Below are positions 2,881 through 63,243 of a DNA stretch of 64,000 bases, piece after piece. The notes beneath the pieces are model-generated. The model saw only the letters and a list, made by a program, of their open reading frames with translations. It searched no databases and was not told where the DNA came from. Where the stretch lies: positions 16,306,001-16,370,000 of the forward strand of contig OZ059898.1 of the NCBI GenBank assembly GCA_964057225.1, read 5' to 3'. Position numbers and translations under genes: made by a program. The DNA is from Auanema rhodensis. Lineage: Eukaryota > Animalia > Nematoda. Position 1 is the first letter of the stretch, and every line of letters begins with the position of its first letter.

Positions 2881-5800
2881 GATAGTTTGAAGAAGTCAAG
2901 TAAAGAACTGGGATCCTACCTAGTATGGCTCTCACGGATTTTAAAATTTTCTGGGTTTACTGTATTTTGAGAATATTTAGAAGATAAATCAAGATGATAG
3001 TGGTTCAGAGGATAGTTTGGACAAGTCAAATCAAGGACTGGGATCCTACCTAGTATGCCTCTCACGGATTTTTTAAAATTTTCTCGGATTACTGTATTTT
3101 GAGAATATTTAGAAGATAAATCAAGATGATAGTGGTTCAGAGGATAGTTTGGACAAGTCAAATCAAGGACTGGGATCCTACCTAGTATGCCTCTCACGGA
3201 TTTTTTAAAATTTTCTCGGATTACTGTATTTTGAGAATATTTAGAAGATAAATCAAGATGATAGTGGTTCAGAGGATAGTTTGGACAAGTCAAATCAAGG
3301 ACTGGGATCCTACCTAGTATGCCTCTCACGGATTTTTTAAAATTTTCTCGGATTACTGTATTTTGAGAATATTTAGAAGATAAATCAAGATGATAGTGGT
3401 TCAGAGGATAGTTTGGACAAGTCAAATCAAGGACTGGGATCCTACCTAGTATGCCTCTCACGGATTTTTTAAAATTTTCTCGGATTACTGTATTTTGAGA
3501 ATATTTAGAAGATAAATAAAGATGATAGTGGTTCAGAGGATAGTTTGGACAAGTCAAGTCAAGGACTGGGATCCTACCTAGTATGTCAATCACGAATTTT
3601 AAAATTTTCTGGGATTACTGTATTTTGAGAATATTTAGAAGATAAATCAAGATGATAGTGGTTCAGAGGATAGTTTGGACAAGTCAAATCAAGAACTGGG
3701 ATCCTACCTAGTATGCCTCTCACGGATTTTTTAAAATTTTCTCGGATTACTGTATTTTGAGAATATTTAGAAGATAAATAAAGATGATAGTGGTTCAGAG
3801 GATAGTTTGGACAAGTCAAGTCAAAGACTGGGATCCTACCTAGTATGTCAATCACGAATTTTAAAATTTTCTGGGATTACTGTATTTTGAGAATATTTAG
3901 AAGATAAATCAAGATGATAGTGGTTCAGAGGATAGTTTGGACAAGTCAAATCAAGAACTGGGATCCTACCTAGTATGCCTCTCACGGATTTTTTAAAATT
4001 TTCTGGGATTACTGTATTTTGAGAATATTTAGAAGATAAATCAAGATGATAGTGGTTCAGAGGATAGTTTGGACAAGTCAAGTCAAGGACTGGGATCCTA
4101 CCTAGTATGCCAATCACGAATTTTAAAATTTTCTGGGATTACTGTATTTTGAGAATATTTAGAAGATAAATCAAGATGATAGTGGTTCAGAGGATAGTTT
4201 GGACAAGTCAAGTCAAGGACTGGGATCCTACCTAGTATGCCTCTCACGGATTTTAAAATTTTCTGGGATTACTGTATTTTGAGAATATTTAGAAGATAAA
4301 TCAAGATGATAGTGGTTCAGAGGATAGTTTGGACAAGTCAAATCAAGAACTGGGATCCTACCTAATATGCCACTCACGGATTTTGAAATTTTCTGGGTTT
4401 ACTGTATTTTGAGAATATTTAGAAGAAAAATCAAGATGATAGTGGTTCAGAGGATAGTTTGGACAAGTCAAGTCAAGAACTGGGATCCTACCTAGTATGC
4501 CTCTCACGGATTTTAAAATTTTCTGGGATTACTGTATTTTGAGAATATTTAGAAGATAAATCAAGATGATAGTTGTTCAGAGGATAGTTTGGACAAGTCA
4601 AATCAAGGACTGGGATCCTACCTAGTATGCCTCTCACGGATTTTAAAATTTTCTGGGATTACTGTATTTTGAGAATATTTAGAAGATAAATCAAGATGAT
4701 AGTGGTTCAGAGGATAGTTTGGACAAGTCAAGTCAAGGACTGGGATCCTACCTAGTATGCCTCTCACGGATTTTAAAATATTCTGGGATTACTGTATTTT
4801 GAGAATATTTAGAAGATAAATCAAGATGATAGTGGTTCAGAGGATAGTTTGGACAAGTCAAGTCAAGGACTGGGATCCTACCTAGTATGCCTCTCACGGA
4901 TTTTAAAATTTTCTCGGATTACTGTATTTTGAGAATATTTAGAAGATAAATCAAGATGATAGTGGTTCAGAGGATAGTTTGGACCAGTCAAGTCAAGAAC
5001 TGGGATCCTACGTAGTATGCCTCTCACGGATTTTAAATTTTTCTGGGTTTACTGTATTTTGAGAATATTTAGAAGATAAATCAAGATGATAGTGGTTCAG
5101 AGGATAGTTTGGACCAGTCAAGTCAAGGACTGGGATCCTACCTAGTATGCCTCTCACGGATTTAAAAATTTTCTGGGATTACTGTATTTTGAGAATATTT
5201 AGAAGATAAATCAAGATGATAGTGGTTCAGAGAATAGTTTGGACAAGTCAAATCAAGAACTGGGATCCTACCTAGTATCCCTCTCACGGATTTTAAATTT
5301 TTCTGGGTTTACTGTATTTTGAGAATATTTAGAAGATAAATCAAGATGATAGTGGTTCAGAGGATAGTTTGGACCAGTCAAGTCAAGGACTGGGATCCTA
5401 CCTAGTATGCCTCTCACGGATTTTAAAATTTTCTGGGATTACCGTATTTTGAGAATATTTAGAAGATAAATCAAGATGATAGTGGTTCAGAGGATGGTTT
5501 GGACAAGTCAAATCAAAAACTGGGATCCTACGTAGTATGCCTCTCACGGATTTTAAATTTTTCTGGGTTTACTGTATTTTGAGAATATTTAGAAGATAAA
5601 TCAAGATGATAGTGGTTCAGAGGATAGTTTGGACCAGTCAAGTCAAGGACTGGGATCCTACCTAGTATGCCTCTCACGGATTTAAAATTTTTCTGGGTTT
5701 ACTGTATTTTGAGAATATTTAGAAGATAAATCAAGATGATAGTGGTTCAGAGGATAGTTTGGACCAGTCAAGTCAAGGACTGGGATCCTACCTAGTATGC

Positions 5801-8800
5801 CTCTCACGGATTTAAAATTTTTCTGGGTTTACTGTATTTTGAGAATATTTAGAAGATAATTCAAGATGATAGTGGTTCAGAGGATAGTTTGGACAAGTCA
5901 AGTCAAGGACTGGGATCCTACCTAGTATGCCTCTCACGGATTTAAAATTTTTCTGGGTTTACTGTATTTTGAGAATATTTAGAAGATAAATCAAGATGAT
6001 AGTGGTTCAGAGGATAGTTTGGACAAGTCAAGTCAAGGACTGGGATCCTACCTAGTATGCCTCTCACGGATTTTAAAATTTTCTGGGATTACTGTATTTT
6101 GAGAATATTTAGAAGATAAATCAAGATGATAGTGGTTCAGAGGATAGTTTGGACAAGTCAAATCAAGAACTGGGATCCTACCTAGTATGCCTCTCACGGA
6201 TTTTAAAATTTTCTGGGATTACTGTATTTTGAGAATATTTAGAAGATAAATCAAGATGATAGTGGTTCAGAGGATAGTTTGGACAAGTCAAATCAAGGAC
6301 TGGGATCCTACCTAGTATGCCTCTCACGGATTTAAAAATTTTCTGGGATTACTGTATTTTGAGAATATTTAGAAGATAAATCAAGATGAAGTGGGTCAGA
6401 TGATAGTTTGGACAAGTCAAGTCAAGGAATGGGATCCTACCTAGTTTGCCTCTCACGGATTTTAAAATTTTCTGGGATTACTGTATTTTGAGAATATTTA
6501 GAAGATAAATCAAGATGATAGTGGTTCAGAGGATAGTTTGGACAAGTCAAATCAAGGACTGGGATCCTACCTAGTATGCCTCTCACGGATTTTTTAAAAT
6601 TTTCTCGGATTACTGTATTTTGAGAATATTTAGAAGATAAATAAAGATGATAGTGGTTCAGAGGATAGTTTGGACAAGTCAAATCAAGAACTGGGATCCT
6701 ACCTAGTATGCCTCTCACGGATTTTAAAATTTTCTGGGATTACTGTATTTTGAGAATATTTAGAAGATAAATAAAGATGATAGTGGTTCAGAGGATAGTT
6801 TGGACAAGTCAAGTCAAGGACTGGGATCCTACCTAGTATGTCAATCACGAATTTTAAAATTTTCTTGGTTTACTGTATTTTGAGAATATTTAGAAGATAA
6901 ATCAAGATGAAGTGGGTCAGATGATAGTTTGGACAAGTCAAGTCAAGGAATGGGATCCTACCTAGTTTGCCTCTCACGGATTTTAAAATTTTCTGGGTTT
7001 ACTGTATTTTGAGAATATTTAGAAGATAAATCAATATGATAGTGGTTCAGAGGATAGTTTGGACAAGTCAAGTCAAGGACTGGGATCCTACCTAGTATGC
7101 CTCTCACGGATTTTAAAATTTTCTTGGTTTACTGTATTTTGAGAATATTTAGAAGATAAATCAAGATGATAGTGGTTCAGAGGATAGTTTGGACAAGTCA
7201 AATCAAGAACTGGGATCCTACCTAGTATGCCTCTCACGGATTTTAAAATTTTCTGGGATTACTGTATTTTGAGAATATTTAGAAGATAAATCAAGATGAT
7301 AGTGGTTCAGAGGATAGTTTGGACAAGTCAAGTCAAGGACTGGGATCCTACCTAGTATCCCTCTCACGGATTTTAAATTTTTCTGGGTTTACTGTATTTT
7401 GAGAATATTTAGAAGATAAATCAAGATGAAGTGGGTCAGATGATAGTTTGGACAAGTCAAGTCAAGGAATGGGATCCTACCTAGTTTGCCTCTCACGGAT
7501 TTTAAAATTTTCTGGGATTACTGTATTTTGAGAATATTTAGAAGATAAATCAAGATGATAGTGGTTCAGAGGATAGTTTGGACAAGTCAAATCAAGGACT
7601 GGGATCCTACCTAGTATGCCTCTCACGGATTTTTTAAAATTTTCTCGGATTACTGTATTTTGAGAATATTTAGAAGATAAATAAAGATGATAGTGGTTCA
7701 GAGGATAGTTTGGACAAGTCAAATCAAGAACTGGGATCCTACCTAGTATGCCTCTCACGGATTTTAAAATTTTCTGGGATTACTGTATTTTGAGAATATT
7801 TAGAAGATAAATAAAGATGATAGTGGTTCAGAGGATAGTTTGGACAAGTCAAGTCAAGGACTGGGATCCTACCTAGTATGTCAATCACGAATTTTAAAAT
7901 TTTCTTGGTTTACTGTATTTTGAGAATATTTAGAAGATAAATCAAGATGAAGTGGGTCAGATGATAGTTTGGACAAGTCAAGTCAAGGAATGGGATCCTA
8001 CCTAGTTTGCCTCTCACGGATTTTAAAATTTTCTGGGTTTACTGTATTTTGAGAATATTTAGAAGATAAATCAATATGATAGTGGTTCAGAGGATAGTTT
8101 GGACAAGTCAAGTCAAGGACTGGGATCCTACCTAGTATGCCTCTCACGGATTTTAAAATTTTCTTGGTTTACTGTATTTTGAGAATATTTAGAAGATAAA
8201 TCAAGATGATAGTGGTTCAGAGGATAGTTTGGACAAGTCAAATCAAGAACTGGGATCCTACCTAGTATGCCTCTCACGGATTTTAAAATTTTCTGGGATT
8301 ACTGTATTTTGAGAATATTTAGAAGATAAATCAAGATGATAGTGGTTCAGAGGATAGTTTGGACAAGTCAAGTCAAGGACTGGGATCCTACCTAGTATGC
8401 CTCTCAAGGATTTTAAAATTTTCTGGGTTTACTGTATTTTGAGAATATTTAGAAGATAAATCAAGATGATAGTGGTTCAGAGGATAGTTTGGACAAGTCA
8501 AGTCAAGGACTGGGATCCTACCTAGTATGCCTCTCACGGATTTTAAAATTTTCTGGGTTTACTGTATTTTGTAAATATTTAGAAGATAAATCAAGATGAT
8601 AGTGGTTCAGAGGATAGTTTGGACAAGTCAAGTCAAGGACTGGGATCCTACCTAGTATGCCTCTCACGGATTTTAAAATTTTCTGGGTTTACTGTATTTT
8701 GAGAATATTTAGAAGATAAATCAAGATGAAGTGGGTCAGATGATAGTTTGGACAAGTCAAGTCAAGGACTGGGATCCTACCTAGTATGCCTCTCACGGAT

Positions 8801-11800
8801 TTTAAAATTTTCTGGGTTTACTGTATTTTGTAAATATTTAGAAGATAAATCAAGATGATAGTGGTTCAGAGGATAGTTTGGACAAGTCAAGTCAAGGACT
8901 GGGATCCTACCTAGTATGCCTCTCACGGATTTTAAAATTTTCTGGGTTTACTGTATTTTGAGAATATTTAGAAGATAAATCAAGATGAAGTGGGTCAGAT
9001 GATAGTTTGGACAAGTCAAGTCAAGGACTGGGATCCTACCTAGTATGCCTCTCACGGATTTTAAAATTTTCTGGGTTTACTGTATTTTGAGAATATTTAG
9101 AAGATAAATCAAGATGATAGTGGTTCAGAGGATAGTTTGGACAAGTCAAGTCAAGGACTGGGATCCTACCTAGTATGCCTCTCACGGATTTTAAAATTTT
9201 CTGGGTTTACTGTATTTTGAGAATATTTAGAAGATAAATCAAGATGATAGTGGTTCAGAGGATAGTTTGGACAAGTCAAGTCAAGGACTGGGATCCTACC
9301 TAGTATGCCTCTCAAGGATTTTAAAATTTTCTGGGTTTACTGTATTTTGAGAATATTTAGAAGATAAATCAAGATGATAGTGGTTCAGAGGATAGTTTGG
9401 ACAAGTCAAGTCAAGGACTGGGATCCTACCTAGTATGCCTCTCACGGATTTTAAAATTTTCTGGGTTTACTGTATTTTGAGAATATTTAGAAGATAAATC
9501 AAGATGATAGTGGTTCAGAGGATAGTTTGGACAAGTCAAGTCAAGGACTGGGATCCTACCTAGTATGCCTCTCGAGGATTTTAAAATTTTCTGGGTTTAC
9601 TGTATTTTGAGAATATTTAGAAGATAAATCAAGATGATAGTGGTTCAGAGGATAGTTTGGACAAGTCAAGTCAAGGACTGGGATCCTACCTAGTATGCCT
9701 CTCACGGATTTTAAAATTTTCTGGGTTTACTGTATTTTGAGAATATTTAGAAGATAAATCAAGATGATAGTGGTTCAGAGGATAGTTTGGACAAGTCAAG
9801 TCAAGGACTGGGATCCTACCTAGTATGCCTCTCAAGGATTTTAAAATTTTCTGGGTTTACTGTATTTTGAGAATATTTAGAAGATAAATCAAGATGATAG
9901 TGGTTCAGAGGATAGTTTGGACAAGTCAAGTCAAGGACTGGGATCCTACCTAGTATGCCTCTCAAGGATTTTAAAATTTTCTGGGTTTACTGTATTTTGA
10001 GAATATTTAGAAGATAAATCAATATGATAGTGGTTCAGAGGATAGTTTGGACAAGTCAAGTCAAGGACTGGGATCCTACCTAGTATGCCTCTCAAGGATT
10101 TTAAAATTTTCTGGGTTTACTGTATTTTGAGAATATTTAGAAGATAAATCAATATGATAGTGGTTCAGAGGATAGTTTGGACAAGTCAAGTCAAGGACTG
10201 GGATCCTACCTAGTATGCCTCTCAAGGATTTTAAAATTTTCTGGGTTTACTGTATTTTGAGAATATTTAGAAGATAAATCAAGATGATAGTGGTTCAGAG
10301 GATAGTTTGGACAAGTCAAATCAAGAACTGGGATCCTACCTAGTATGCCTCTCACGGATTTTAAAATTTTCTGGGTTTACTGTATTTTGAGAATATTTAG
10401 AAGATAAATCAAGATGATAGTGGTTCAGAGGATAGTTTGGACAAGTCAAGTCAAGGACTGGGATCCTACCTAGTATGCCTCTCAAGGATTTTAAAATTTT
10501 CTGGGTTTACTGTATTTTGAGAATATTTAGAAGATAAATCAAGATGATAGTGGTTCAGAGGATAGTTTGGACAAGTCAAGTCAAGGACTGGGATCCTACC
10601 TAGTATGCCTCTCACGGATTTTAAAATTTTCTGGGTTTACTGTATTTTGAGAATATTTAGAAGATAAATTAATATGATAGTGGTTCAGAGGATAGTTTGG
10701 ACAAGTCAAGTCAAGGACTGGGATCCTACCTAGTATGCCTCTCACGGATTTTAAAATTTTCTTGGTTTACTGTATTTTGAGAATATTTAGAAGATAAATC
10801 AAGATGATAGTGGTTCAGAGGATAGTTTGGACAAGTCAAATCAAGAACTGGGATCCTACCTAGTATGCCTCTCACGGATTTTAAAATTTTCTGGGTTTAC
10901 TGTATTTTGAGAATATTTAGAAGATAAATCAAGATGATAGTGGTTCAGAGGATAGTTTGGACAAGTCAAATCAAGAACTGGGATCCTACGTAGTATGCCT
11001 CTCACGGATTTTAAAATTTTCTGGGATTACTGTATTTTGAGAATATTTAGAAGATAAATCAAGATGATAGTGGTTCAGAGGATAGTTTGGACAAGTCAAA
11101 TCAAGAACTGGGATCCTACGTAGTATGCCTCTCACGGATTTTAAAATTTTCTGGGATTACTGTATTTTGAGAATATTTAGAAGATAAATCAAGATGATAG
11201 TGGGTCAGATGATAGTTTGGACAAGTCAAATCAAGAACTGGGATCCTACGTAGTATGCCTCTCACGGATTTTAAAATTTTCTGGGATTACCGTATTTTGA
11301 GAATATTTAGAAGATAAATCAAGATGATAGTGGTTCAGAGGATAGTTTGGACAAGTCAAGTCAAGGACTGGGATCCTACCTAGTATGCCTCTCAAGGATT
11401 TTAAAATTTTCTTGGTTTACCGTATTTTGAGAATATTTAGAAGACAAATCAAGATGATAGTGGTTCAGAGGATAGTTTGGACAAGTCAAGTCAAGGACTG
11501 GGATCCTACCTAGTATGCCTCTCACGGATTTTAAAATTTTCTGGGTTTACTGTATTTTGAGAATATTTAGAAGATAAATCAAGATGATAGTGGTTCAGAG
11601 GATAGTTTGGACAAGTCAAATCAAGAACTGGGATCCTACGTAGTATGCCTCTCACGGATTTTAAAATTTTCTGGGATTACTGTATTTTGAGAATATTTAG
11701 AAGATAAATCAAGATGATAGTGGGTCAGATGATAGTTTGGACAAGTCAAATCAAGAACTGGGATCCTACGTAGTATGCCTCTCACGGATTTTAAAATTTT

Positions 11801-35800: not shown

Positions 35801-38800
35801 ATAAATCAAGATGATAGTGGTTCAGTGGATAGTTTGGACAAGTCAAATCAAGAACTGGGATCCTACCTAGTATACCTCTCACGGATTTTAAAACTTTTCT
35901 GGGATTACTGTATTTTGAGAATATTTAGAAGATAAATCAAGATGATAGTGGTTTAGAGGATAGTTTGAAAAAGTCAAATGAAGGACTGGGATCCTACCTA
36001 GTATGCCTCTCACGGATTTTAAAACTTTTCTGGGATTACTGTATTTTAAGAATATTTAGAAGATAAATCAAGATGATAGTGGTTTAGAGGATAGTTTGAA
36101 AAAGTCAAATGAAGGACTGGGATCCTACGTAGTATGCCTCTCACGGATTTTAAAACTTTTCTGGGTTTACTGTATTTTGAGAATATTTAAAAGATAAATC
36201 AAGATGATAGTGGTTCAGTGGATAGTTTGGACAAGTCAAATCAAGAACTGGGATCCTACCTAGTATACCTCTCACGGATTTTAAAACTTTTCTGGGATTA
36301 CTGTATTTTGAGAATATTTAGAAGATAAATCAAGATGATAGTGGTTTAGAGGATAGTTTGAAAAAGTCAAATGAAGGACTGGGATCCTACCTAGTATGCC
36401 TCTCACGGATTTTAAAACTTTTCTGGGATTACTGTATTTTAAGAAATTTTAGAAGATAAATCAAGATGATAGTGGTTTAGAGGATAGTTTGGACAAGTCA
36501 AATCAAGAACTGGGATCCTACCTAGTATACCTCTCACGGATTTTAAAACTTTTCTGGGTTTACTGTATTTTGAGAATATTTAAAAGATAAATCAAGATGA
36601 TAGTGGTTCAGTGGATAGTTTGGACAAGTCAAATCAAGAACTGGGATCCTACCTAGTATGCCTCTCACGGATTTTAAAACTTTTCTGGGATTACTGTATT
36701 TTGAGAATATTTAGAAGATAAATCAAGATGATAGTGGTTTAGAGGATAGTTTGAAAAAGTCAAATGAAGGACTGGGATCCTACGTAGTATGCCTCTCACG
36801 GATTTTAAAATTTTCTGGGATTACTGTATTTTGAGAATATTTAAAAGATAAATCAAGATGATAGTGGTTCAGTGGATAGTTTGGACAAGTCAAATCAAGA
36901 ACTGGGATCCTACCTAGTATACCTCTCACGGATTTAAAAACTTTTCTGGGATTACTGTATTTTAAGAAATTTTAGAAGATAAATCAAGATGATAGTGGTT
37001 CAGTGGATAGTTTGGACAAGTCAAATCAAGAACTGGGATCCTACCTAGTATACCTCTCACGGATTTTAAAACTTTTCTGGGATTACTGTATTTTGAGAAT
37101 ATTTAAAAGATAAATCAAGATGATAGTGGTTCAGTGGATAGTTTGGACAAGTCAAATCAAGAACTGGGATCCTACCTAGTATACCTCTCACGGATTTTAA
37201 AACTTTTCTGGGATTACTGTATTTTGAGAATATTTAGAAGATAAATCAAGATGATAGTGGTTTAGAGGATAGTTTGAAAAAGTCAAATGAAGGACTGGGA
37301 TCCTTTCTAGTATGCCTCTCACGGATTTTAAAACTTTTCTGGGATTAATGTATTTTAAGAATATTTAGAAGATAACTCAAGATGATAGTGGGTCAGATGA
37401 TAGTTTGGACAAGTCAAATCAAGAACTGGGATCCTACCTAGTATGCCTCTCACGGATTTTAAAACTTTTCTGGGATTACTGTATTTTGAGAATATTTAGA
37501 AGATAAATCAAGATGATAGTGGTTTAGAGGATAGTTTGGACAAGTCAAATCAAGAACTGGGATCCTACCTAGTATGCTTCTCACGGATTTTAAAACTTTT
37601 CTGGGATTACTGTATTTTAAGAAATTTTAGAAGATAAATCAAGATGATAGTGGTTCAGAGGATAGTTTGGACAAGTCAAATCAAGAACTGGGATCCTACC
37701 TAGTATTCCTCTCACGGATTTTAAAATTTTCTGGGATTACTGTATTTTAAGAATATTTAGAAGATAACTCAAGATGATAGTGGTTCAGAGAATAGTTTGG
37801 ACAAGTCAAATCAAGAACTGGGATCCTACCTAGTATGCCTCTCACGGATTTTAAAACTTTTCTGGGATTACTGTATTTTAAGAAATTTTAGAAGATAAAT
37901 CAAGATGATAGTGGTTCAGAGGATAGTTTGGACAAGTCAAGTCAAGTCAAGGATTGGGATTCTACCTAGTATGCCTCTCACAGATTTTAAAACTTTTCTG
38001 GGATTACTGTATTTTGAGAATATTTAGAAAATGAATCAAGATGATAGGGGTTCAGAGGATAGTTTGGACAAGTCAAATCAAGGACTGGGATCCTACCTAG
38101 TATGCCTCTCACGGATTTTAAAATTTTCTGGGATTACTGTATTTTAAGAAATTTTAGAAGATAAATCAAGATGATAGTGGTTCAGAGGATAGTTTGGACA
38201 AGTCAAATCAAGAACTGGGATCCTACCTAGTATGCCTCTCACGGATTTTAAAATTTTCTGGGATTACTGTATTTTAAGAAATTTTAGAAGATAAATCAAG
38301 ATGATAGTGGTTCAGAGGATAGTTTGGACAAGTCAAATCAAGAACTGGGATCCTACCTAGTATTCCTCTCACGGATTTTAAAATTTTCTGGGATTACTGT
38401 ATTTTAAGAATATTTAAAAGATAAATCAAGATGATAGTGGTTCAGAGGATAGTTTGGACAAGTCAAGTCAAGAACTGGGATCCTACCTAGTATACCTCTC
38501 ACGGATTTTAAAATTTTCTGGGATTACTGTATTTTGAGAATATTTAGAAGATAAATCAAGATGATAGTGGTTTAGAGGATAGTTTGAAAAAGTCAAATGA
38601 AGGACTGGGATCCTACCTAGTATGCCTCTCACGGATTTTAAAACTTTTCTGGGATTACTGTATTTTGAGAATATTTAGAAGATAAATCAAGATGATAGTG
38701 GTTTAGAGGATAGTTTGAAAAAGTCAAATCAAGAACTGGGATCCTACCTAGTATGCTTCTCACGGATTTTAAAACTTTTCTGGGATTACTGTATTTTAAG

Positions 38801-41800
38801 AAATTTTAGAAGATAAATCAAGATGATAGTGGTTCAGAGGATAGTTTGGACAAGTCAAATCAAGAACTGGGATCCTACCTAGTATTCCTCTCACGGATTT
38901 TAAAATTTTCTGGGATTACTGTATTTTAAGAAATTTTAGAAGATAAATCAAGATGATAGTGGTTCAGAGGATAGTTTGGACAAGTCAAGTCAAGTCAAGG
39001 ATTGGGATTCTACCTAGTATGCCTCTCACAGATTTTAAAACTTTTCTGGGATTACTGTATTTTAAGAAATTTTAGAAGATAAATCAAGATGATAGTGGTT
39101 CAGAGGATAGTTTGGACAAGTCAAATCAAGAACTGGGATCCTACCTAGTATGCCTCTCACGGATTTTAAAACTTTTCTGGGATTACTGTATTTTGAGAAT
39201 ATTTAGAAGATAAATCAAGATGATAGTGGTTTAGAGGATAGTTTGGACAAGTCAAATCAAGAACTGGGATCCTACCTAGTATGCCTCTCACGGATTTTAA
39301 AACTTTTCTGGGATTACTGTATTTTGAGAATATTTAGAAGATAAATCAAGATGATAGTGGTTTAGAGGATAGTTTGGACAAGTCAAATCAAGAACTGGGA
39401 TCCTACCTAGTATTCCTCTCACGGATTTTAAAATTTTCTGGGATTACTGTATTTTAAGAATATTTAAAAGATAAATCAAGATGATAGTGGTTCAGAGGAT
39501 AGTTTGGACAAGTCAAGTCAAGAACTGGGATCCTACCTAGTATACCTCTCACGGATTTTAAAATTTTCTGGGATTACTGTATTTTGAGAATATTTAGAAG
39601 ATAAATCAAGATGATAGTGGTTTAGAGGATAGTTTGAAAAAGTCAAATGAAGGACTGGGATCCTACCTAGTATGCCTCTCACGGATTTTAAAACTTTTCT
39701 GGGATTACTGTATTTTGAGAATATTTAGAAGATAAATCAAGATGATAGTGGTTTAGAGGATAGTTTGGACAAGTCAAATCAAGAACTGGGATCCTACCTA
39801 GTATGCTTCTCACGGATTTTAAAACTTTTCTGGGATTACTGTATTTTAAGAAATTTTAGAAGATAAATCAAGATGATAGTGGTTCAGAGGATAGTTTGGA
39901 CAAGTCAAATCAAGAACTGGGATCCTACCTAGTATTCCTCTCACGGATTTTAAAATTTTCTGGGATTACTGTATTTTAAGAAATTTTAGAAGATAAATCA
40001 AGATGATAGTGGTTCAGAGGATAGTTTGGACAAGTCAAGTCAAGTCAAGGATTGGGATTCTACCTAGTATGCCTCTCACAGATTTTAAAACTTTTCTGGG
40101 ATTACTGTATTTTAAGAAATTTTAGAAGATAAATCAAGATGATAGTGGTTCAGAGGATAGTTTGGACAAGTCAAATCAAGAACTGGGATCCTACCTAGTA
40201 TGCCTCTCACGGATTTTAAAACTTTTCTGGGATTACTGTATTTTGAGAATATTTAGAAGATAAATCAAGATGATAGTGGTTTAGAGGATAGTTTGGACAA
40301 GTCAAATCAAGAACTGGGATCCTACCTAGTATGCCTCTCACGGATTTTAAAACTTTTCTGGGATTACTGTATTTTGAGAATATTTAGAAGATAAATCAAG
40401 ATGATAGTGGTTTAGAGGATAGTTTGGACAAGTCAAATCAAGAACTGGGATCCTACCTAGTATTCCTCTCACGGATTTTAAAATTTTCTGGGATTACTGT
40501 ATTTTAAGAAATTTTAGAAGATAAATCAAGATGATAGTGGTTTAGAGGATAGTTTGGACAAGTCAAATCAAGAACTGGGATCCTACCTAGTATTCCTCTC
40601 ACGGATTTTAAAATTTTCTGGGATTACTGTATTTTGAGAATATTTAGAAAATGAATCAAGATGATAGGGGTTCAGAGGATAGTTTGGACAAGTCAAATCA
40701 AGGACTGGGATCCTACCTAGTATGCCTCTCACGGATTTTAAAACTTTTCTGGGATTACTGTATTTTAAGAAATTTTAGAAGATAAATCAAGATGATAGTG
40801 GTTCAGAGGATAGTTTGGACAAGTCAAGTCAAGTCAAGGATTGGGATTCTACCTAGTATGCCTCTCACAGATTTTAAAACTTTTCTGGGATTACTGTATT
40901 TTGAGAATATTTAGAAAATGAATCAAGATGATAGGGGTTCAGAGGATAGTTTGGACAAGTCAAATCAAGGACTGGGATCCTACCTAGTATGCCTCTCACG
41001 GATTTTAAAATTTTCTGGGATTACTGTATTTTAAGAAATTTTAGAAGATAAAGAAAGATAATAGGGGTTCAGAGGATAGTTTGGACAAGTCAAATCAAGA
41101 ACTGGGATCCTACCTAGTATGCCTCTCACGGATTTTAAAATTTTCTGGGATTACTGTATTTTGAGAATATTTAGAAAATGAATCAAGATGATAGTGGTTC
41201 AGAGGATAGTTTGGACAAGTCAAGTCAAGGACTGGGATCCTACCTAGTATGCCTCTCACGGATTTTAAAATTTTCTGGGATTACTGTATTTTAAGAAATT
41301 TTAGAAGATAAAGAAAGATAATAGGGGTTCAGAGGATAGTTTGGACAAGTCAAGTCAAGTCAAGGATTGGGATTCTACCTAGTATGCCTCTCACGGATTT
41401 TAAAATTTTCTGAGATTACTGTATTTTAAGAAATTTTAGAAGATAAATCAAGATGATAGTGGTTCAGAGGATAGTTTGGACAAGTCAAGTCAAGAACTGG
41501 GATCCTACCTAGTATGCCTCTCACGGATTTTAAAATTTTCTGGGATTACTGTATTTTGAGAATATTTAGAAAATGAATCAAGATGATAGGGGTTCAGAGG
41601 ATAGTTTGGACAAGTCAAGTCAAGTCAAGGATTGGGATTCTACCTAGTATGCCTCTCACGGATTTTAAAATTTTCTGGGATTACTGTATTTTAAGAAATT
41701 TTAGAAGATAAATCAAGATGATAGTGGTTCAGAGGATAGTTTGGACAAGTCAAATCAAGAACTGGGATCCTACCTAGTATGCCTCTCACGGATTTTAAAA

Positions 41801-42637
41801 TTTTCTGGGATTACTGTATTTTGAGAATATTTAGAAAATGAATCAAGATGATAGGGGTTCAGAGGATAGTTTGGACAAGTCAAGTCAAGTCAAGTCTTGG
41901 GATTCTACCTAGTATGCCTCTCACGGATTTTAAAATTTTCTGGGATTACTGTATTTTAAGAAATTTTAGAAGATAAATCAAGATGATAGTGGTTCAGAGG
42001 ATAGTTTGGACAAGTCAAATCAAGAACTGGGATCCTACCTAGTATGCCTCTCACGGATTTTAAAATTTTCTGGGATTACTGTATTTTAAGAAATTTTAGA
42101 AGATAAATCAAGATGATAGTGGTTCAGAGGATAGTTTGGACAAGTCAAGTCAAGTCAAGGATTGGGATTCTACCTAGTATGCCTCTCACGGATTTTAAAA
42201 TTTTCTGAGATTACTGTATTTTAAGAAATTTTAGAAGATAAATCAAGATGATAGTGGTTCAGAGGATAGTTTGGACAAGTCAAATCAAGAACTGGGATCC
42301 TACCTAGTATGCCTCTCACGGATTTTAAAATTTTCTGGGATTACTGTATTTTGAGAATATTTAGAAGATAAATCAAGATGATAGTGGTTCAGAGGATAGT
42401 TTGGACAAGTCAAGTCAAGAACTGGGATCCTACCTAGTATGCCTCTCACGGATTTTAAAATTTTCTGGGATTACTGTATTTTAAGAATATTTAGAAGATA
42501 ACTCAAGATGATAGGGGTTCAGAGGATAGTTTGGACAAGTCAAGTCAAGTCAAGGATTGGGATTCTACCTAGTATGCCTCTCACGGATTTTAAAATTTTC
42601 TGAGATTACTGTATTTTAAGAAATTTTAGAAGATAAA
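2881..42637. repeat. Tandem satellite array, 130-bp monomer (variants 129-136 bp), ~305 head-to-tail copies, BamHI site in most copies
   Basis: Consensus ctgggatcctacctagtatgcctctcacggattttaaaattttctgggattactgtattttgagaatatttagaagataaatcaagatgatagtggttcagaggatagtttggacaagtcaa(a/g)tcaag(g/a)a. The 130-bp period is directly visible (e.g. agtcaaggac at 4081 and 4211). The first copy (2881) is degenerate and the array ends abruptly at ~42637. I saw no inversions or foreign insertions. Confidence 0.99.
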
Positions 42638-43969
42638 AGAATAATCTGTAACTTGGTGTTAGTAATAGACATTTAAAGTTTTATAACAACAAACCCGAAT
42701 ATTATCATGCTCGTTTCATATACATAATTGTGCTAGTGTTTATAACTGTTTATGTACAGTTGTAAAGTCTTATAAGTAAAAATAACATATAGATAAACTG
42801 AATTTTCCAGTAGTCATACAAGAGGGTCATGCTGAGATTTAACTGGAAGATATTACGACGCAGCTTCATTTACATACATATATACTTGTTATCGTATTTC
42901 AGATAATGAGGAACAACCTTTGTGCGAGTGCTATTTAGACAATTTCTTCTGTTTTCACTTTGATGGTTTTCTTAAAATGTAAAAAAATCTAGTTAAAAAA
43001 TTAAATTTTATAGAAAAGATATTATAAAAGTTTTTTAAATTATAGGGATTTCGTTGTTTTGCTACATCTTACTGTAGCCTACAATGGATAATAGATGGGT
43101 CACGGGACCTCTTTTCAAAATTATTTTCTGTTTTGTAAAGCATTGCTATGGCATTCACATATATGAAGAATACAAGAATGATAGGAAATCAAAGAAATGG
43201 GGTATTATCAAATTTATTTCTCTCATTCTACACTGATCAAGAATTGTTTAAACTATTATTATTATTATTGTTATTAAGCTAGTATAGTAATCACTCTATG
43301 AAAGAGTTTTCCCAAAACAAAAAATTAGAAAATGGCTTCGCAATCATGATGGTCTGCGTCGGGATCATTTTCGCTTTGTGGTCTTTGTGGTCCATATCAT
43401 AACATTTTCATTCAGAGAAATCAAAGAGAAGTAGAAGGCTCCTAACAATCTGAGATCTACCTGAAATTTATGGGAACAAAGCCCCTGCGAGCCTGTCAAA
43501 AGAACTGGAAAATACCACACTAGAAAGCATAAAATAGGACTCACAATTCGTAGCATAAATTTCCTCTTTGCTACAAGTTCCTGAGATTCTCGTGAAAAAA
43601 AAGTTATCGCAAAACCTAAGCAATCATAACCGCGAGCGTGGTCTACTAACCTTCGTAGACCCTTATTTGTTGAATCTTCATGTTTTGATAAGAGAACGAG
43701 CATCATTTTCCGAACATATTACGTCCATTTTGATTTAAGAGAGAAGAATGGGTTAACAACAAAAATCCTTCGTTTTTTTCAAAAGCAGGGATACACCATT
43801 AAGTGTACCACATCAAACATAGTCTAGGGAATCAATTTATGAAATTGGAAACTTCTCACCCGATATATGAAGACAAACAGCGACAATTAAACGAGGAACA
43901 GGAAAGGTACGTGGTTGAACAAGCCATGGGGAAGCAAGAAGAGCCAGAACGAGGAACAACACTGAAAAT
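42638..43969 (-). ncRNA. Putative stress-inducible long non-coding transcript, unique 5' region (may continue through the satellite)
   Basis: Inferred from the promoter only. The first ATG (43927) opens a 23-codon ORF, MACSTTYLSCSSFNCRCLSSYIG*. I found no recognisable spliced protein. There is a minus-strand AATAAA at 43218-43213 and several short stem-loops. No transcript evidence is available. Confidence 0.4.
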
Positions 43970-44162
43970 GATGTTGACGCTACGCGTCCTCCTTATATAC
44001 TGCCACTCTAGCTCCGCCTCCTCGTGACAGCATAGAGACAACATCAGTGAAGTGAGCAGAGGCACTAGCGACATAAAGACTATAGGACGCGCAGAGGTAT
44101 TCAGACTGCTAGAAAACCGCTTCGCGAACCTTCTGGACGCTTCTATCGATTGTTCCGCCCAC
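43969..44162 (-). promoter_or_regulatory. Heat-shock-type Pol II promoter on the minus strand: GC box - HSE - GC box - TATA - Inr
   Basis: HSE 44120-44144 = cTTCg cGAAc cTTCt gGAcg cTTCt, five alternating nGAAn units in exact 5-bp register with one mismatch. Sp1-like boxes TCCGCCCA at 44154-44161 and CTCCGCCTCC at 44012-44021. TATA GTATATAAG on the minus strand at 44000-43992. Initiator TCATT with its A at 43969, 30 nt downstream of the first T of the TATA box. The segment is locally GC/CpG-richer than its flanks. Confidence 0.75.
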
Positions 44163-45233
44163 TGAAGGTTGTGTTAGATTTCGAATGAAAACGAAACATT
44201 CTTTCGACAAATAGCTTATCGAATAGAAGAATTTTGAAATTTGCAGCAGAAATAGAATTCTTCGTTATAAATCATCATAGATTGGGAAACGTATTTCGAA
44301 ATAAAAAAAAAAAAAGAAATTGTTAACCAAAGGATTGATTTGAACTTTTTCGAAAGTAAAGGGATCGTAACAGTTGAATATATTTAATATTAGTTATTTT
44401 ATAAAATTATAACTAACTAAAAATATTCAAAATTTCGAAACTACTCAGGGTTTTGTTGTTTATGAGTAGATTCTAATGTTTGAACATATTGCTTAGCAAC
44501 GAAATATATATGTCGAGTATACCTACATGCATAGATGTTCACCAAAATGATCAATAATCTTTCGTATTTGCATGAAATTACTTCTTTTTTCAAAATATTG
44601 TTTTAGTATAATAATATAATAAAACTGAAAAAAGTAATATTCTGAAGAAAAAGAATGGAAAAGCAGGTTGATGAGTTGGCTATTACACATAGTTACATAC
44701 AGTTATTAGCATCTTTTTAAATGTATGTTGTGATGAAAATTAATATTTAAACTATTTTCAAAATACGATAGTTGTTTTCAAATTTATTTTTGTAGAAAAT
44801 AGTATTATGGTTTTTAAAAATGTATTTTGCTTTTGCACCTTTCTGTCATCGTGCAAGACTCAAAAAAACATAATAATTTTTATCATTTTTAGTTCATTTT
44901 TTAAGAAAAAAATATGATTATAATAGGTTTTTATATAAATATTATTAATAATTTCATTTTAAAGGTAGAATGTTTTGTATATTTAAACAGTAACATTAGA
45001 ATATAAGGTGGTATATGAGATGATTTTGCTGAAAAAAAGAAGAAAAGTAGAAAACGGAAATTGTTAAAAGTTTATTTTCAATTTCATTAATTCACAAATC
45101 TTCAACTTACATGATAATAAGCAATAGAAAGTAAGCAAAGAGTTCCCGTATTTCGCACGACAGTTAAACATAAGTTTTCGAGCAAGGTGATATTGTATAA
45201 TACATAAAGCCATTATAATATTTTAATAAATAT

Positions 45234-47126: not shown

Positions 47127-47745
47127 TTCGTTTTAGCAGCTAAATACTCCAAATTATGTAATGGAGTATGTAGTAGTATGGATATGAAAGTCAGATGTTT
47201 GGGAACTATTTTGGCAATTTTAACTAACGAAGAAACTGAAAGTGAAGAGTTTTGAAAACAAAAAAAAAGAGAAAGAAGCAAATGAAAAATAAAATATAGT
47301 AATATATAATATAGAAAAAAGAAAATAAGACACTATTAATTTTTAGATTTTAAGGTATAATTTGAAGAAAACTGAAAAAAAAAATGAAAAATTTTGAAAA
47401 CAACAAAGTAAATTAAAAAAAAAGAATAAAATACTTTGATATATAATTTATAAGTTAAAAAACTATATAAATTATACTTGAAATAATAAAAATGTATTTG
47501 TTTTTATAAATATAAATGGAACAGATAATCTTATAATCTGTTATAATCTTAATTTTTTCAATAGTAAAATAACTTAGTGATATGAACAGTAAAATTATAA
47601 AAATAGTCTGATAAAACGTTTGGTAAAGAGAGATTACAAAGATAGAAATGCATATATACATATGTACGTATATAATAATAAAATGTATCAACTATATGAT
47701 ATAATCAAGAAAAATAGTGTTAAGGTTATTGGATGTATGAAGAAG

Positions 47746-47812
47746 GAGAGAGAGAGAGAGAGCGAGAGAAAAAGAGAGAGAGCGAGAGAGAGAGAGGGGG
47801 GGGAGAGGGAGA
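47746..47812 (+). repeat. (GA)n microsatellite with G-run, upstream of the GPCR
   Basis: gagagagagagagagagcgagagaaaaagagagagagcgagagagagagagggggggagagggaga seen directly. Confidence 0.9.
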
Positions 47813-62899: not shown

Positions 62900-63243
62900 G
62901 TGTGTATATGTATATGTATATACATATATATGTATTTCTCACCTGACAACCATTTTCTAATTATATTTATGTTAGTTTGTGATACAGATTCTTGTTACTT
63001 ATTTATATAGATATTTAGATTAACAAATCGATAAAACATTATAACTTTGAAAAATAAAAATTTGTTGATGAGTAAATTAGATAGATATGAATTATGTTCC
63101 TTAATTGTGTCGCGTATTATTGCTCATTTGTGGCTTAATCTTCCTTCTGCTTCTAATTTGATTGTTTTGTCGCTCTTTTCATTCGCCTACTTCTATGAAA
63201 TTTGCTTTATTTTTCTAACCATATCTGGTCCCTAGGATGCTCA

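What the first reader, a model, noticed from the sequence alone, without database searches (positions are those of the whole stretch)
2881..44162. Heat-shock promoter aimed into a 40-kb satellite: candidate hsr-omega-like stress lncRNA locus in a nematode
Seen: a five-unit HSE (44120-44144), two GC boxes, a TATA box (44000-43992) and an Inr at the canonical 30-nt spacing (43969). The TATA and Inr are on the minus strand. Downstream there is no heat-shock protein or other long ORF, only a 23-codon ORF, a possible early AATAAA (43218-43213) and, 1.33 kb from the predicted start, the 130-bp array. The minus strand of the consensus monomer has no AATAAA, whereas minus-strand AATAAA hexamers occur just past the far end (2642-2637, 2536-2531, 2524-2519), before the convergent CD36 gene. 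Established: Drosophila hsr-omega has this layout (HSF-driven promoter, short unique region with a tiny ORF, proximal poly(A) site, long tandem-repeat tail kept in the nuclear isoform), and human HSF1 drives Satellite III transcription in nuclear stress bodies. Inference: this may be an analogous repeat-containing architectural RNA. I know of no described nematode equivalent. AATAAA is common in AT-rich DNA, so the poly(A) evidence is weak.
Basis: partly seen in the sequence, partly recalled or inferred. Interest (0 to 1): 0.85.

Follow-up and report, generated by a model that had tools for sequence, protein, structure and literature searches.

The report
Conserved heat-shock-promoter lncRNA facing a satellite
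A nematode (Auanema) gene makes an abundant 770-base non-coding RNA from a promoter carrying a heat-shock element and aimed at a 40-kb repeat array. A sister species keeps the same layout, which resembles the fly stress gene hsr-omega down to a shared short repeat motif, but heat induction and transcription into the repeats are unproven.

Summary
**Observation: confirmed.**
- The 130-bp x 305 array lies at 2881-42637.
- The five-unit HSE lies at 44121-44143, about 0.06 expected per window by chance.
- TATA, Inr, both GC boxes, the 23-codon ORF and the AATAAA pattern are all as described.

**New evidence**
1. RNA contigs from four public runs give an unspliced RNA, 43963 to 43198/9. This fits the predicted start (43969) and the AATAAA at 43218-43213. 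Its depth is 20-70 times that of the neighbouring GPCR gene.
2. No ORF is protein-like or conserved.
3. The window is an Auanema, probably A. rhodense. In Auanema sp. JU1783 the promoter and RNA align at 73% over 928 nt, while flanking intergenic DNA does not align. The HSE block, TATA, start site and poly(A) signal stand out as conserved islands.
4. JU1783 also has a same-strand array about 0.8 kb past the poly(A) site. Its unit is different (263 bp, an old dimer of about 131 bp).
5. Both arrays carry TAGGTAGG on the lncRNA strand. In the window it reads CTAGGTAGG, a published hsr-omega repeat nonamer variant (chance about 0.001).

**Not shown:** heat induction, or transcripts entering the array. 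The satellite RNA signal does not track lncRNA level.

**Verdict:** a real new lncRNA gene with an hsr-omega-like layout. The long repeat isoform remains inference. Another first-stage note in this scan reports a heat-shock promoter facing repeats elsewhere in this genome (unchecked).

The parts
44100..44160 (-). Conserved upstream promoter block. It holds a GC-rich box (GGGCGGAAC, 44160-44152) and the five-unit HSE (44143-44121).
   Evidence: Sequence. HSE statistics. The block is 77% identical to JU1783, with 42-45% on both sides. In JU1783 the core GAAggTTC is kept and the flanking units are degenerate.
43970..44023 (-). Core promoter: second GC box (about 44023-44012), TATATAA (43999-43993) and Inr (A at 43969).
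   Evidence: Sequence. The GGCGGAG box, the TATA box and the start-site sequence are conserved in JU1783. Sliding 40-column identity is 0.80-0.88 at the start site.
43199..43969 (-). Transcription unit of the roughly 770-nt unspliced, polyadenylated lncRNA (the short, main isoform).
   Evidence: Collinear RNA contigs 43198/9-43954/63 in runs X2 and X3, 43199-43883 in X4 and 43045-43806 in X1, at depth 33-335 with no gaps. No Pfam, homolog or atlas support for any ORF. 73% identity to JU1783 over 928 nt. 14 of 16 indels are not multiples of 3. No Rfam match.
43856..43927 (-). First-AUG ORF of 23 codons plus stop. It is not conserved.
   Evidence: Translation. The ATG aligns to CTG in JU1783.
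43412..43464 (-). Most conserved block of the RNA, a 53-nt predicted hairpin.
   Evidence: 52 of 53 nt are identical to JU1783, and the single change lies in the apical loop. It appears in both the MFE and the centroid fold. With no variation in the stems, covariation cannot be tested.
43213..43218 (-). Proximal poly(A) signal AATAAA; cleavage at about 43199.
   Evidence: It is the only minus-strand AATAAA between the start site and the array. Contigs end 14-15 nt downstream of it. The signal and its flanks are conserved in JU1783: 89% over 37 nt, 0.85 in the sliding profile.
42638..43198 (-). Unique spacer between the poly(A) site and the array. It is not conserved and shows low-level read-through in one run.
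   Evidence: The X1 contig runs on to 43045, and a depth-2.9 contig covers 42806-43019; nothing covers 42638-42805. No alignment to JU1783.
2881..42637 (-). Tandem array of about 305 monomers of 130 bp. The strand continuous with the lncRNA carries CTAGGTAGG once per monomer (for example 42437-42429) and no AATAAA.
   Evidence: TRF result. Consensus and variants. CTAGGTAGG occurs 235 times on the minus strand, 0 on the plus strand and 0 elsewhere in the window. The chance of any of the six published nonamers appearing is about 0.001. No minus-strand AATAAA.

Best explanation
**What it is.** This is a genus-conserved RNA polymerase II gene for a long non-coding RNA. Its layout matches Drosophila hsr-omega.

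**Shown**
- A TATA/Inr promoter with a conserved upstream block (GC-rich box plus HSE) starts transcription at about 43969 on the minus strand.
- The main product is an abundant, unspliced RNA of about 770 nt. It has no conserved ORF and ends at a conserved AAUAAA, with cleavage at about 43199.
- 0.56 kb further on, on the same strand, a 40-kb array of 130-bp repeats begins.
- A sister species keeps the same order and orientation: GPCR gene, lncRNA, short unique spacer, tandem array. Its repeat unit has diverged.
- Both arrays carry UAGGUAGG on the lncRNA strand and lack AAUAAA on that strand.

**Inferred**
- HSF-1 binds the HSE. A GC-rich box lies about 25 bp upstream of it, as at developmental HSF-1/E2F targets in C. 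elegans. HSF-1 would therefore give both the high basal expression seen and further induction by heat.
- When the proximal poly(A) site is bypassed, Pol II runs into the array. About 1% bypass is seen in one run, and more is expected under heat shock, which weakens termination in C. elegans.
- The resulting repeat-containing RNA would carry hundreds of UAGGUAGG sites. These are of the type bound by hnRNP A1-class proteins, so the RNA could hold such proteins at the locus.

**My odds**
- The lncRNA gene is real: about 0.95.
- It is under HSF-1 control: about 0.6.
- Some read-through into the array occurs under stress: about 0.6.
- The repeat RNA has a protein-sequestering function: about 0.3.
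For: - **Start and end of the RNA:** contigs from four runs match the predicted start and poly(A) site at depth 33-335. The neighbouring GPCR gene is at 0-12.
- **HSE:** chance expectation is 0.06 per window, and it is the only perfect trimer in 64 kb.
- **Conservation in Auanema sp. JU1783:** 73% over 928 nt at E 4e-122, while neighbouring intergenic DNA does not align.
- **Conservation peaks:** the HSE block, TATA and start site, blocks within the RNA, and the poly(A) signal.
- **Non-coding:** indels are not in threes and no ORF is conserved. No homologs, Pfam families or protein-like features were found.
- **JU1783 array:** it starts about 0.8 kb past the poly(A) site, on the same strand, and runs at least 6.7 kb with scaffold gaps. 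Its 263-bp unit is an old dimer of about 131 bp.
- **Motif in the window:** CTAGGTAGG occurs in 235 of about 305 monomers, on the lncRNA strand only.
- **Motif in JU1783:** TAGGTAGG occurs in 5 of 10 visible copies, on the lncRNA strand only.
- **Chance of the motif:** about 0.001 per unit.
- **Link to hsr-omega:** the nonamer ATAGGTAGG and variants, including CTAGGTAGG, are the conserved feature of hsr-omega repeats. They are reported there to bind Hrb87F and Hrb98DE (bioRxiv 10.1101/695486).
- **Termination signals:** no AATAAA on the lncRNA strand of either array.
- **Read-through:** contigs in X1 reach 42806.
- **Background in C. elegans:** heat shock causes downstream-of-gene read-through, and the HSF-1 granule sites are unknown (PMC6453478). 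A GC-rich motif 20-40 bp upstream of an HSE marks developmental HSF-1 targets (PMC5066613).
Against: - **No heat-shock data.** High expression in ordinary libraries shows the promoter does not need stress.
- **No bridging contig.** Nothing joins the unique spacer to the satellite. Contigs at 42637 continue as satellite.
- **Satellite signal is uncoupled from the lncRNA.** X4 has the most lncRNA (335) and no satellite signal. X3 has the least lncRNA (33) and satellite at 748.
- **Origin of the satellite signal is uncertain.** Its strand is unknown, and DNA carry-over cannot be excluded if the repeat has many more copies elsewhere.
- **The strong, conserved poly(A) signal** ends nearly all transcripts before the array.
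- **The HSE is only partly conserved** in JU1783: two perfect units flanked by GAC units.
- **The nonamer shows no special retention.** It ranks 79 of 130 among 9-mers in the array, and half the visible JU1783 copies read TAGGTACG.
- **Shared position may be simple inheritance,** because the two arrays are probably homologous.
- **The nonamer match was looked for after the hypothesis was on the table,** so its nominal p-value overstates the evidence.
- **No special fold:** energy z-score is +0.52.
Confidence: 0.5

Rival explanations
1. Stand-alone lncRNA with a bystander satellite. The conserved 770-nt RNA is the whole functional product. The array is ordinary satellite DNA that was already next to the gene in the common ancestor. 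It is not meaningfully transcribed from this promoter, and the UAGGUAGG match is coincidence or a remnant of shared ancestry.
For: - Nearly all transcripts end at the conserved poly(A) site, and no contig bridges into the array.
- Satellite signal is absent in the run with the most lncRNA.
- The spacer between the poly(A) site and the array is not conserved.
- The nonamer is not preferentially retained in the array and is lost in half of the visible JU1783 copies.
- The two satellites are probably homologous, so shared position and orientation need no selection.
- The genome is very rich in satellites (bioRxiv 10.64898/2026.08.27.747507), so promoters next to arrays are expected.
Against: - The motif has a chance of about 0.001 per unit. 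It lies on the correct strand in both species and is identical to a published hsr-omega variant.
- The array persists at the same place although neutral DNA between the species no longer aligns.
- Read-through in X1 reaches within 170 bp of the array.
- Neither array has a poly(A) signal on that strand.
Confidence: 0.35
2. Constitutive or developmental promoter rather than a stress promoter. The GC-rich box plus HSE works like the C. elegans E2F/HSF-1 developmental promoters, or through another factor that binds the conserved block. The RNA is a housekeeping or larval lncRNA with little heat response. This is compatible with either view of the satellite.
For: - Depth is high in all four runs of a 2019 study. 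If these are the published Auanema sets, they are described as L2 larvae, adult males and mixed stages, with no heat shock mentioned.
- A GC-rich box lies about 25 bp upstream of the HSE centre. This matches the 20-40 bp spacing reported in PMC5066613.
- The JU1783 HSE is degenerate, as at developmental targets.
- The conserved block extends beyond the HSE, through CAATCGATAG on one side and GCGGTTnTCTAGC on the other.
Against: - The window's HSE has four perfect units out of five, which is the canonical heat-inducible type.
- hsr-omega itself is both constitutive and heat-inducible, so basal expression does not argue against induction.
Confidence: 0.35
3. The satellite signal in the RNA libraries does not come from this promoter. 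It would be genomic DNA carry-over of a high-copy repeat, plus-strand read-through from the convergent CD36 gene, or transcription that starts inside the array.
For: - Satellite depth (0, 748, 1207, 1919) does not follow lncRNA depth (335, 33, 248, 255) across X4, X3, X2 and X1.
- The contigs carry no strand information.
- The CD36 gene points into the far end of the array.
- The plus strand of the array has AATAAA in only 8 monomers.
Against: - Unique intergenic DNA at 44110-45100 and 47310-48300 has no contigs. DNA carry-over would therefore need well over 1,000 repeat copies to explain the depth.
- The run with the highest satellite signal (X1) is also the only one showing read-through past the poly(A) site.
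Confidence: 0.5
4. A small-protein mRNA. The RNA is translated into the 23-residue Cys-rich peptide or another short ORF, and that peptide is the functional product.
For: - The first AUG (43927) opens a 23-codon ORF.
- hsr-omega has a translatable ORF of similar size.
Against: - That ATG is CTG in JU1783.
- Only four AUGs are shared between the species, and the ORFs that follow them differ in length and sequence.
- Indels are not in threes.
- The most conserved stretches show no synonymous-type variation.
- No homologs were found.
Confidence: 0.03

Closest known systems
Drosophila hsr-omega (93D) lncRNA gene
   Same: - The promoter carries HSEs.
- A short unique region holds a tiny first ORF.
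- A proximal poly(A) site gives a short transcript.
- A long same-strand tandem array follows.
- Repeat and unique sequences diverge quickly between species while the layout is kept.
- The repeats carry the nonamer ATAGGTAGG or variants. CTAGGTAGG, the form found here, is one of the published variants.
   Different: - There is no intron, whereas hsr-omega has the ultra-conserved omega intron.
- The small ORF is not conserved.
- The array is longer (40 kb against 5-15 kb), with a 130-bp unit.
- The unique RNA is well conserved within the genus, unlike hsr-omega exons.
- The long isoform and heat induction are not shown.
- No sequence homology is expected, and none was tested.
Human Satellite III transcription in nuclear stress bodies
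   Same: An HSF-linked promoter element sits next to a long satellite. The proposed outcome is a repeat RNA that holds RNA-binding proteins at its own locus.
   Different: - In humans HSF1 binds within the satellite itself, and transcripts start there.
- Here the monomer has no HSE; its best match has 2 mismatches in a 3-unit pattern.
- The HSE here belongs to a discrete upstream gene.
C. elegans HSF-1-dependent lincRNAs and heat-induced downstream-of-gene transcripts (PMC6765114, PMC6453478)
   Same: These are nematode non-coding RNAs with HSEs in their promoters. Heat shock weakens termination there, which gives a known route from a short transcript into downstream DNA.
   Different: - The papers I read describe no locus with a repeat tail.
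- No sequence relative of this lncRNA lies next to the npr-21-like gene in four Caenorhabditis loci.
C. elegans developmental HSF-1/E2F promoters (PMC5066613)
   Same: A GC-rich box lies 20-40 bp upstream of an HSE, and expression is strong without stress.
   Different: - Those targets are chaperone and anabolic protein genes.
- Binding of EFL-1/DPL-1 or HSF-1 is untested here.
- The GC box matches the E2F motif only loosely.

Membership tests
hsr-omega-type locus (by layout and function, not by homology) | Promoter with HSEs, and heat-inducible transcription | tested here: inconclusive
   The HSE is present and statistically unusual, and its core is conserved in JU1783. Inducibility could not be tested, because no heat-shock run was available and the reads tool is capped at one call.
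hsr-omega-type locus (by layout and function, not by homology) | Proximal poly(A) site that gives a short transcript from the unique region | tested here: met
   Contigs end at 43198/9, 14-15 nt after AATAAA (43218-43213), in three of four runs. The signal is conserved.
hsr-omega-type locus (by layout and function, not by homology) | Single 'omega' intron with conserved splice junctions | tested here: not met
   All RNA contigs are collinear with the genome, with no gaps or joints between 43199 and 43963.
hsr-omega-type locus (by layout and function, not by homology) | Short translatable ORF (23-27 codons) present in all species | tested here: not met
   A 23-codon first ORF exists in the window, but its ATG is CTG in JU1783.
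hsr-omega-type locus (by layout and function, not by homology) | Long tandem repeats downstream on the same strand, included in a long nuclear isoform | tested here: inconclusive
   An array is present 0.56 kb (window) and about 0.8 kb (JU1783) past the poly(A) site. Read-through is seen only as far as 42806, in one run, and no contig bridges into the array.
hsr-omega-type locus (by layout and function, not by homology) | Nonamer ATAGGTAGG or a variant, repeated in the tandem-repeat part of the transcript and absent from the proximal part | tested here: met
   CTAGGTAGG occurs 235 times on the lncRNA strand of the array. It occurs nowhere else in the window, including the proximal unit. TAGGTAGG occurs only in the JU1783 repeats. 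The list of variants comes from bioRxiv 10.1101/695486.
hsr-omega-type locus (by layout and function, not by homology) | Repeats found only at this locus in the genome | not testable with these tools
   No tool searches this eukaryotic genome. A look-up of earlier findings by sequence came back blank.
hsr-omega-type locus (by layout and function, not by homology) | Layout conserved across species while the repeat sequence diverges | tested here: met
   The order and strand are the same in JU1783. The units are 130 bp and 263 bp, with only marginal similarity (p about 0.03). Only two species could be compared.
Satellite III / nuclear stress body type | HSF binding sites within the satellite repeat itself | tested here: not met
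   No three-unit HSE occurs in the array. The best consensus match has 2 mismatches.
Protein-coding or micropeptide mRNA | An ORF conserved in frame between species, or with detectable relatives | tested here: not met
Transposon or LTR promoter | Multiple copies, terminal repeats, or absence from the orthologous site | tested here: not met
   No second copy exists in the window. The unit is present at the orthologous site in JU1783 with exon-like conservation.
Known structured RNA family (Rfam) | Match to a covariance model | tested here: not met
   No match at gathering threshold across the window, and none at E up to 1 in 42600-44250.

The most novel reading that the evidence does not exclude
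Auanema has a true functional counterpart of hsr-omega, which would be the first outside Diptera. HSF-1 drives the conserved lncRNA gene. Under stress Pol II bypasses the proximal poly(A) site and copies tens of kilobases of 130-bp repeats. The resulting RNA carries about 300 UAGGUAGG sites and stays at the locus. There it gathers hnRNP A1-class proteins (HRPA-1) into a nuclear stress body. That would identify a genomic site for the HSF-1 nuclear granules of nematodes, whose DNA targets are unknown in C. elegans. It would also show that the same repeat motif evolved, or was kept, for this purpose in both flies and worms.
Probability: 0.25. Interest if true: 0.9.

Novelty: new variant of a known kind. 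Interest (0 to 1): 0.72.

Why it matters
Repeat-containing architectural RNAs that respond to heat (fly hsr-omega, human Satellite III) are known in only a few lineages, and they share no sequence. It is therefore unclear whether the strategy is general.

Nematode HSF-1 forms nuclear stress granules at unknown genomic sites (PMC6453478). This locus is a concrete candidate that can be tested at the bench:
- It has a defined promoter, a defined short RNA and a defined repeat.
- It carries a specific protein-binding motif that matches the fly one.
- A second species is available for comparison.

Even if the satellite proves to be a bystander, the result stands as an abundant, genus-conserved, unannotated lncRNA. 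Its footprinted promoter pairs a GC box with an HSE. The organism is of current interest for programmed DNA elimination and for its satellite biology.

Tried and rejected
**Readings rejected**
- **Protein-coding.** The 113-aa ORF (43365-43706, minus) has no homologs, no Pfam family and a non-protein-like atlas score of 0.58. Other ORFs have no Pfam hits. In one search the fourth query (43849-43917) was not the true 23-codon ORF, which is 43927-43859; the slip does not matter for a 23-residue peptide.
- **Known RNA family.** Rfam gives no match at gathering threshold or at E up to 1. No tRNAs were found.
- **Unusually stable fold.** The energy z-score is +0.52. With two sequences the consensus fold has almost no variable pairs, so covariation has no power.
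- **Transposon or LTR.** There is no other copy in the window, and the unit sits at the orthologous site in JU1783.
- **Bidirectional promoter.** No RNA contigs lie between 44110 and 45100.
- **HSEs inside the satellite.** None were found.

**Searches that gave nothing useful**
- **Deeper conservation.** The npr-21-like loci of C. remanei (two assemblies), C. bovis and C. auriculariae (L003-L006) have no lncRNA relative by nhmmer or blastn. The same holds for an unidentified 40%-GC nematode (L001). None has a comparable HSE downstream of the gene.
- **Contig look-ups.** The Diploscapter (P0001) and Meloidogyne (P0007) proteins are not on record.
- **Earlier findings.** Look-ups by place and by sequence were blank.
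- **Supplement.** Table S3 of the A. rhodense preprint, which lists repeat families, is not held. I could not tell whether the 130-bp repeat is named there or is unique to this locus.

Full report
**1.

TRF reports one array at 2881-42637 with period 130, 304.8 copies and 95% matches.
- On the minus strand the HSE reads aGAAgcGTCcaGAAggTTCgcGAAgc at 44143-44121.
- TATATAA lies at 43999-43993.
- An Inr-like CATTTT has its A at 43969, 30 nt downstream of the TATA box.
- GC boxes lie at 44160-44152 and about 44023-44012.

The five-unit HSE pattern with at most one mismatch is found once in 64 kb. That compares with 0.06 expected, and 6 of 100 shuffles give a match. It contains the only perfect three-unit HSE in the window.

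The promoter is a GC peak of 45-53% in DNA that is 14-30% GC upstream.

Minus-strand AATAAA occurs once in the unique leader (43218-43213) and never in the 39.8-kb array. It appears next at 2642, 2536 and 2524. A CD36-family exon on the + strand at 1714-1836 confirms the convergent gene.

**2. The promoter is used, and the RNA starts and ends where predicted**

Four public runs from one 2019 study hold the region as Logan contigs. They contain RNA, because their contigs of the neighbouring gene lack its introns. Laid on 42510-48480 (5,971 letters), they give the following:
- A contig with no gaps or mismatches in every run: 43199-43963 (X2), 43198-43954 (X3), 43199-43883 (X4) and 43045-43806 (X1).
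- Depth of 33-335, against 0-12 for the GPCR gene next door.

The 5' limit of 43963 lies 6 nt inside the predicted start. The 3' limit lies 14-15 nt past the AATAAA. Contigs carry no strand, but the TATA box and AATAAA fit only the minus strand, and the plus strand has no poly(A) signal near 43960. No contig carries extra 5' letters, so there is no sign of a spliced leader. Nothing is transcribed between 44110 and 45100, so the promoter is not visibly bidirectional.

**3. The RNA is non-coding**

- The first AUG (43927) opens the 23-codon ORF.
- The longest ORF has 113 codons and lies behind many upstream AUGs. It has no relatives among 5.8 billion proteins and no Pfam family. Its protein-atlas score is far below that of real proteins.
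- Other ORFs give nothing.
- Rfam finds nothing.
- The fold is no more stable than shuffled sequence, z = +0.52.

**4. The organism, and a sister-species locus**

The neighbouring gene (45100-47241, minus) has nine introns of 43-314 nt, all confirmed by RNA joints. It encodes a 366-residue npr-21-like rhodopsin-type GPCR.

An exon search led to relatives. The best is a 366-residue protein of Auanema sp. JU1783, 96.7% identical. The window is therefore from an Auanema. Other first-stage notes on this genome report giant tRNA and snRNA arrays. Those fit the new A. rhodense germline assembly: 180.9 Mb, 19,554 tRNA genes and 61% of the genome eliminated from the soma (bioRxiv 10.64898/2026.08.27.747507).

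That paper describes the published RNA-seq as L2 larvae, adult males and mixed stages, with no heat shock mentioned. The four runs may be those data sets, but I could not confirm it.

**5. Phylogenetic footprint**

The JU1783 locus (L002) is syntenic with the window. blastn gives these alignments:

| Window region | L002 region | Identity |
|---|---|---|
| GPCR exons | matching exons | 72-83% |
| 44152-43283 | 13167-14057 | 72.8% over 928 nt, E 4e-122 |
| 43235-43199 | 14070-14106 | 89% |

The 1.1 kb between the GPCR gene and the HSE gives no hit. Neither does the DNA beyond the poly(A) site.

In the pairwise alignment, identity runs as follows:

| Segment | Identity |
|---|---|
| Upstream of the HSE block | 45% |
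| HSE block, 44160-44100 | 77% |
| Spacer between HSE and TATA | 42% |
| Around the start site (sliding window) | 80-88% |
| Several blocks within the RNA | 85-97% |
| Around the AATAAA | 85% |
| Past the cleavage site | 42% |

Fourteen of sixteen indels in the RNA are not multiples of three. The ATG of the 23-codon ORF is CTG in JU1783, and no ORF is shared. This is the signature of a selected non-coding RNA with a selected promoter.

The HSE itself is only partly kept. JU1783 reads GACgcGTTtcGAAggTTCgcGAC, so the central pair is perfect and the flanking units are weakened. The conserved block also extends beyond the HSE on both sides.

The best-conserved piece of the RNA is a 53-nt predicted hairpin at 43464-43412. 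It is 52/53 identical, and the one change lies in the loop. Two sequences give no power to test covariation.

Four Caenorhabditis npr-21 loci and one other nematode locus hold no relative of the RNA. The gene is therefore genus-restricted, or it evolves too fast to trace further.

**6. The satellite is conserved in place but not in sequence, and it carries the hsr-omega nonamer**

In JU1783 a tandem family begins at about 14901, roughly 0.8 kb past the poly(A) site. It lies on the same strand as the lncRNA and continues to the end of the fetched locus, at least 6.7 kb. The apparent interruptions are runs of N, meaning scaffold gaps.

The JU1783 unit is 263 bp and is itself an old dimer of about 131 bp (halves score 33, against a null of 15.5 +/- 2.4). 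Its similarity to the window's 130-bp monomer is marginal and confined to the same strand (p about 0.03). The two arrays are therefore probably descendants of one ancestral array that have diverged almost beyond recognition.

Reading the monomer on the lncRNA strand, I recognised CTAGGTAGG. The literature search confirms what that motif is. The one conserved feature of hsr-omega repeats across Drosophila is the nonamer ATAGGTAGG and a few variants, and CTAGGTAGG is explicitly among them. The same preprint states that the hnRNP A1 homologues Hrb87F and Hrb98DE bind the nonamer (bioRxiv 10.1101/695486). UAGG is also reported as an hnRNP A1 binding motif (PMC6335501).

Counts and chance:
- **Window:** CTAGGTAGG occurs 235 times on the lncRNA strand of the array. 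It never occurs on the other strand or anywhere else in the window.
- **Chance, window:** any of the six published nonamers appears on a given strand of a shuffled monomer with probability about 0.001.
- **JU1783:** TAGGTAGG occurs five times in 21.6 kb, always inside the repeats and on the lncRNA strand. Chance is about 0.0009 per unit.

Cautions on the motif:
- It is not better preserved than other 9-mers within the array, ranking 79 of 130.
- Five of the ten visible JU1783 copies read TAGGTACG.
- If the arrays are homologous, the two species are not independent observations.
- I looked for the motif with the hypothesis already in mind.

Neither array has AATAAA on the lncRNA strand. That is weak evidence, because it amounts to one short unit per species.

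**7. Does transcription reach the array?**

This is not shown.

*For:*
- In X1 the lncRNA contig runs 154 nt past the poly(A) site, to 43045. A depth-2.9 contig then covers 42806-43019, about 1% of the lncRNA depth.
- Equally unique intergenic DNA elsewhere has no contigs, so this is unlikely to be DNA carry-over.
- Satellite words are abundant in X1-X3, at depth 748-1919.

*Against:*
- No contig joins the spacer to the satellite.
- Contigs at 42637 continue as satellite.
- The strand is unknown.
- X4 has the most lncRNA and no satellite at all, so the satellite signal is not a simple by-product of this promoter.
- DNA carry-over could explain the signal if the repeat has well over 1,000 copies genome-wide, which I could not check.
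- The convergent CD36 gene could supply plus-strand satellite RNA.

**8. Mechanism proposed**

*Shown:* a conserved TATA/Inr promoter with a GC-box-plus-HSE block makes an abundant, unspliced, polyadenylated lncRNA of about 770 nt. A tandem array lies immediately downstream on the same strand in two species.

*Inferred:*
- HSF-1 binds the HSE. The GC-rich box about 25 bp upstream matches the spacing of the E2F/HSF-1 developmental promoters of C. elegans (PMC5066613). That would explain strong expression without stress, and the near-canonical HSE in this species would add heat induction.
- Heat shock in C. elegans weakens termination and produces downstream-of-gene transcripts (PMC6453478). Bypass of the proximal site would therefore send Pol II into an array with no further poly(A) signal.
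- The product would carry hundreds of UAGGUAGG sites able to hold hnRNP A1-class proteins.

**9. Comparison with known systems**

The layout matches hsr-omega in five respects:
- an HSE promoter;
- a proximal poly(A) site;
- a downstream same-strand array;
- the nonamer on the right strand;
- a conserved layout despite diverging repeats.

It fails in two respects, having no intron and no conserved small ORF. Three points are undecided: heat induction, the long isoform, and whether the repeat is unique to this locus.

It is not of the Satellite III type, because the monomers hold no HSE. HSF-1-dependent lincRNAs are already known in C. elegans (PMC6765114), but the papers I read describe none with a repeat tail. 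The genomic sites of nematode HSF-1 granules are also stated to be unknown.

I therefore class the locus as a new variant of a known kind. It works like hsr-omega in layout, with no claim of homology.

**10. Verdict**

- Its central functional claims remain untested.

My odds:

| Claim | Probability |
|---|---|
| The lncRNA gene is real | about 0.95 |
| HSF-1 controls it | about 0.6 |
| Some stress read-through enters the array | about 0.6 |
| A true hsr-omega-like architectural RNA | about 0.25-0.3 |

Another first-stage note reports a heat-shock promoter facing repeat arrays elsewhere in this genome (s1-373205, unchecked). If true, promoters aimed at arrays may be a recurring theme in this satellite-rich genome. 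That cuts both ways for this locus.

Noticed in passing
window 45100-47241 (minus): An npr-21-like rhodopsin-class GPCR gene of 366 codons. RNA contigs confirm nine introns of 43-314 nt with GT..AG ends. The protein is 96.7% identical to the Auanema sp. JU1783 protein, which identifies the window as an Auanema.
   Followed up: yes
window 46985-48377: In run X4 one contig (depth 32.8) joins 46985 to 48377. It skips 1391 nt with non-canonical GA..TG ends and has 34 extra letters between the two sides. A 255-nt loose end follows at 48397. This could be a chimeric contig, an alternative upstream exon of the GPCR gene, or a structural difference between strains.
   Followed up: no
window 1714-1836 (+): A CD36-family exon (Pfam PF01130, E 1.3e-6) on the strand that converges on the far end of the satellite. 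Read-through from this gene would produce plus-strand satellite RNA.
   Followed up: partly
window 63202-63750 (+): An ORF with a weak match to nematode serpentine chemoreceptor families (Srab, E 9e-4, below the curated cut-off). It is probably one exon of a chemoreceptor gene.
   Followed up: no
L002 15105-15932, 16404-19765, 19961-20151: The JU1783 assembly has runs of N inside its 263-bp satellite. The true length of that array is therefore unknown, and the last five visible copies are near-identical, each scoring the same against the first copy, as expected of a collapsed assembly.
   Followed up: partly
window 26881-42637: Monomers in the third of the array nearest the promoter are slightly more diverged from the consensus than those at the far end. 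Mean score is 118-121 near the promoter and about 122.5 at the far end. Nonamer variants CTAGGTAGA (32 copies) and CTACGTAGG (20 copies) also occur in the array.
   Followed up: partly
window 44100-44160 compared with L002 13160-13215: The conserved promoter island extends beyond the HSE. It includes CAATCGATAG (which holds an ATCGAT palindrome) and GCGGTTnTCTAGCnGTCTG. These may be sites for other factors.
   Followed up: no
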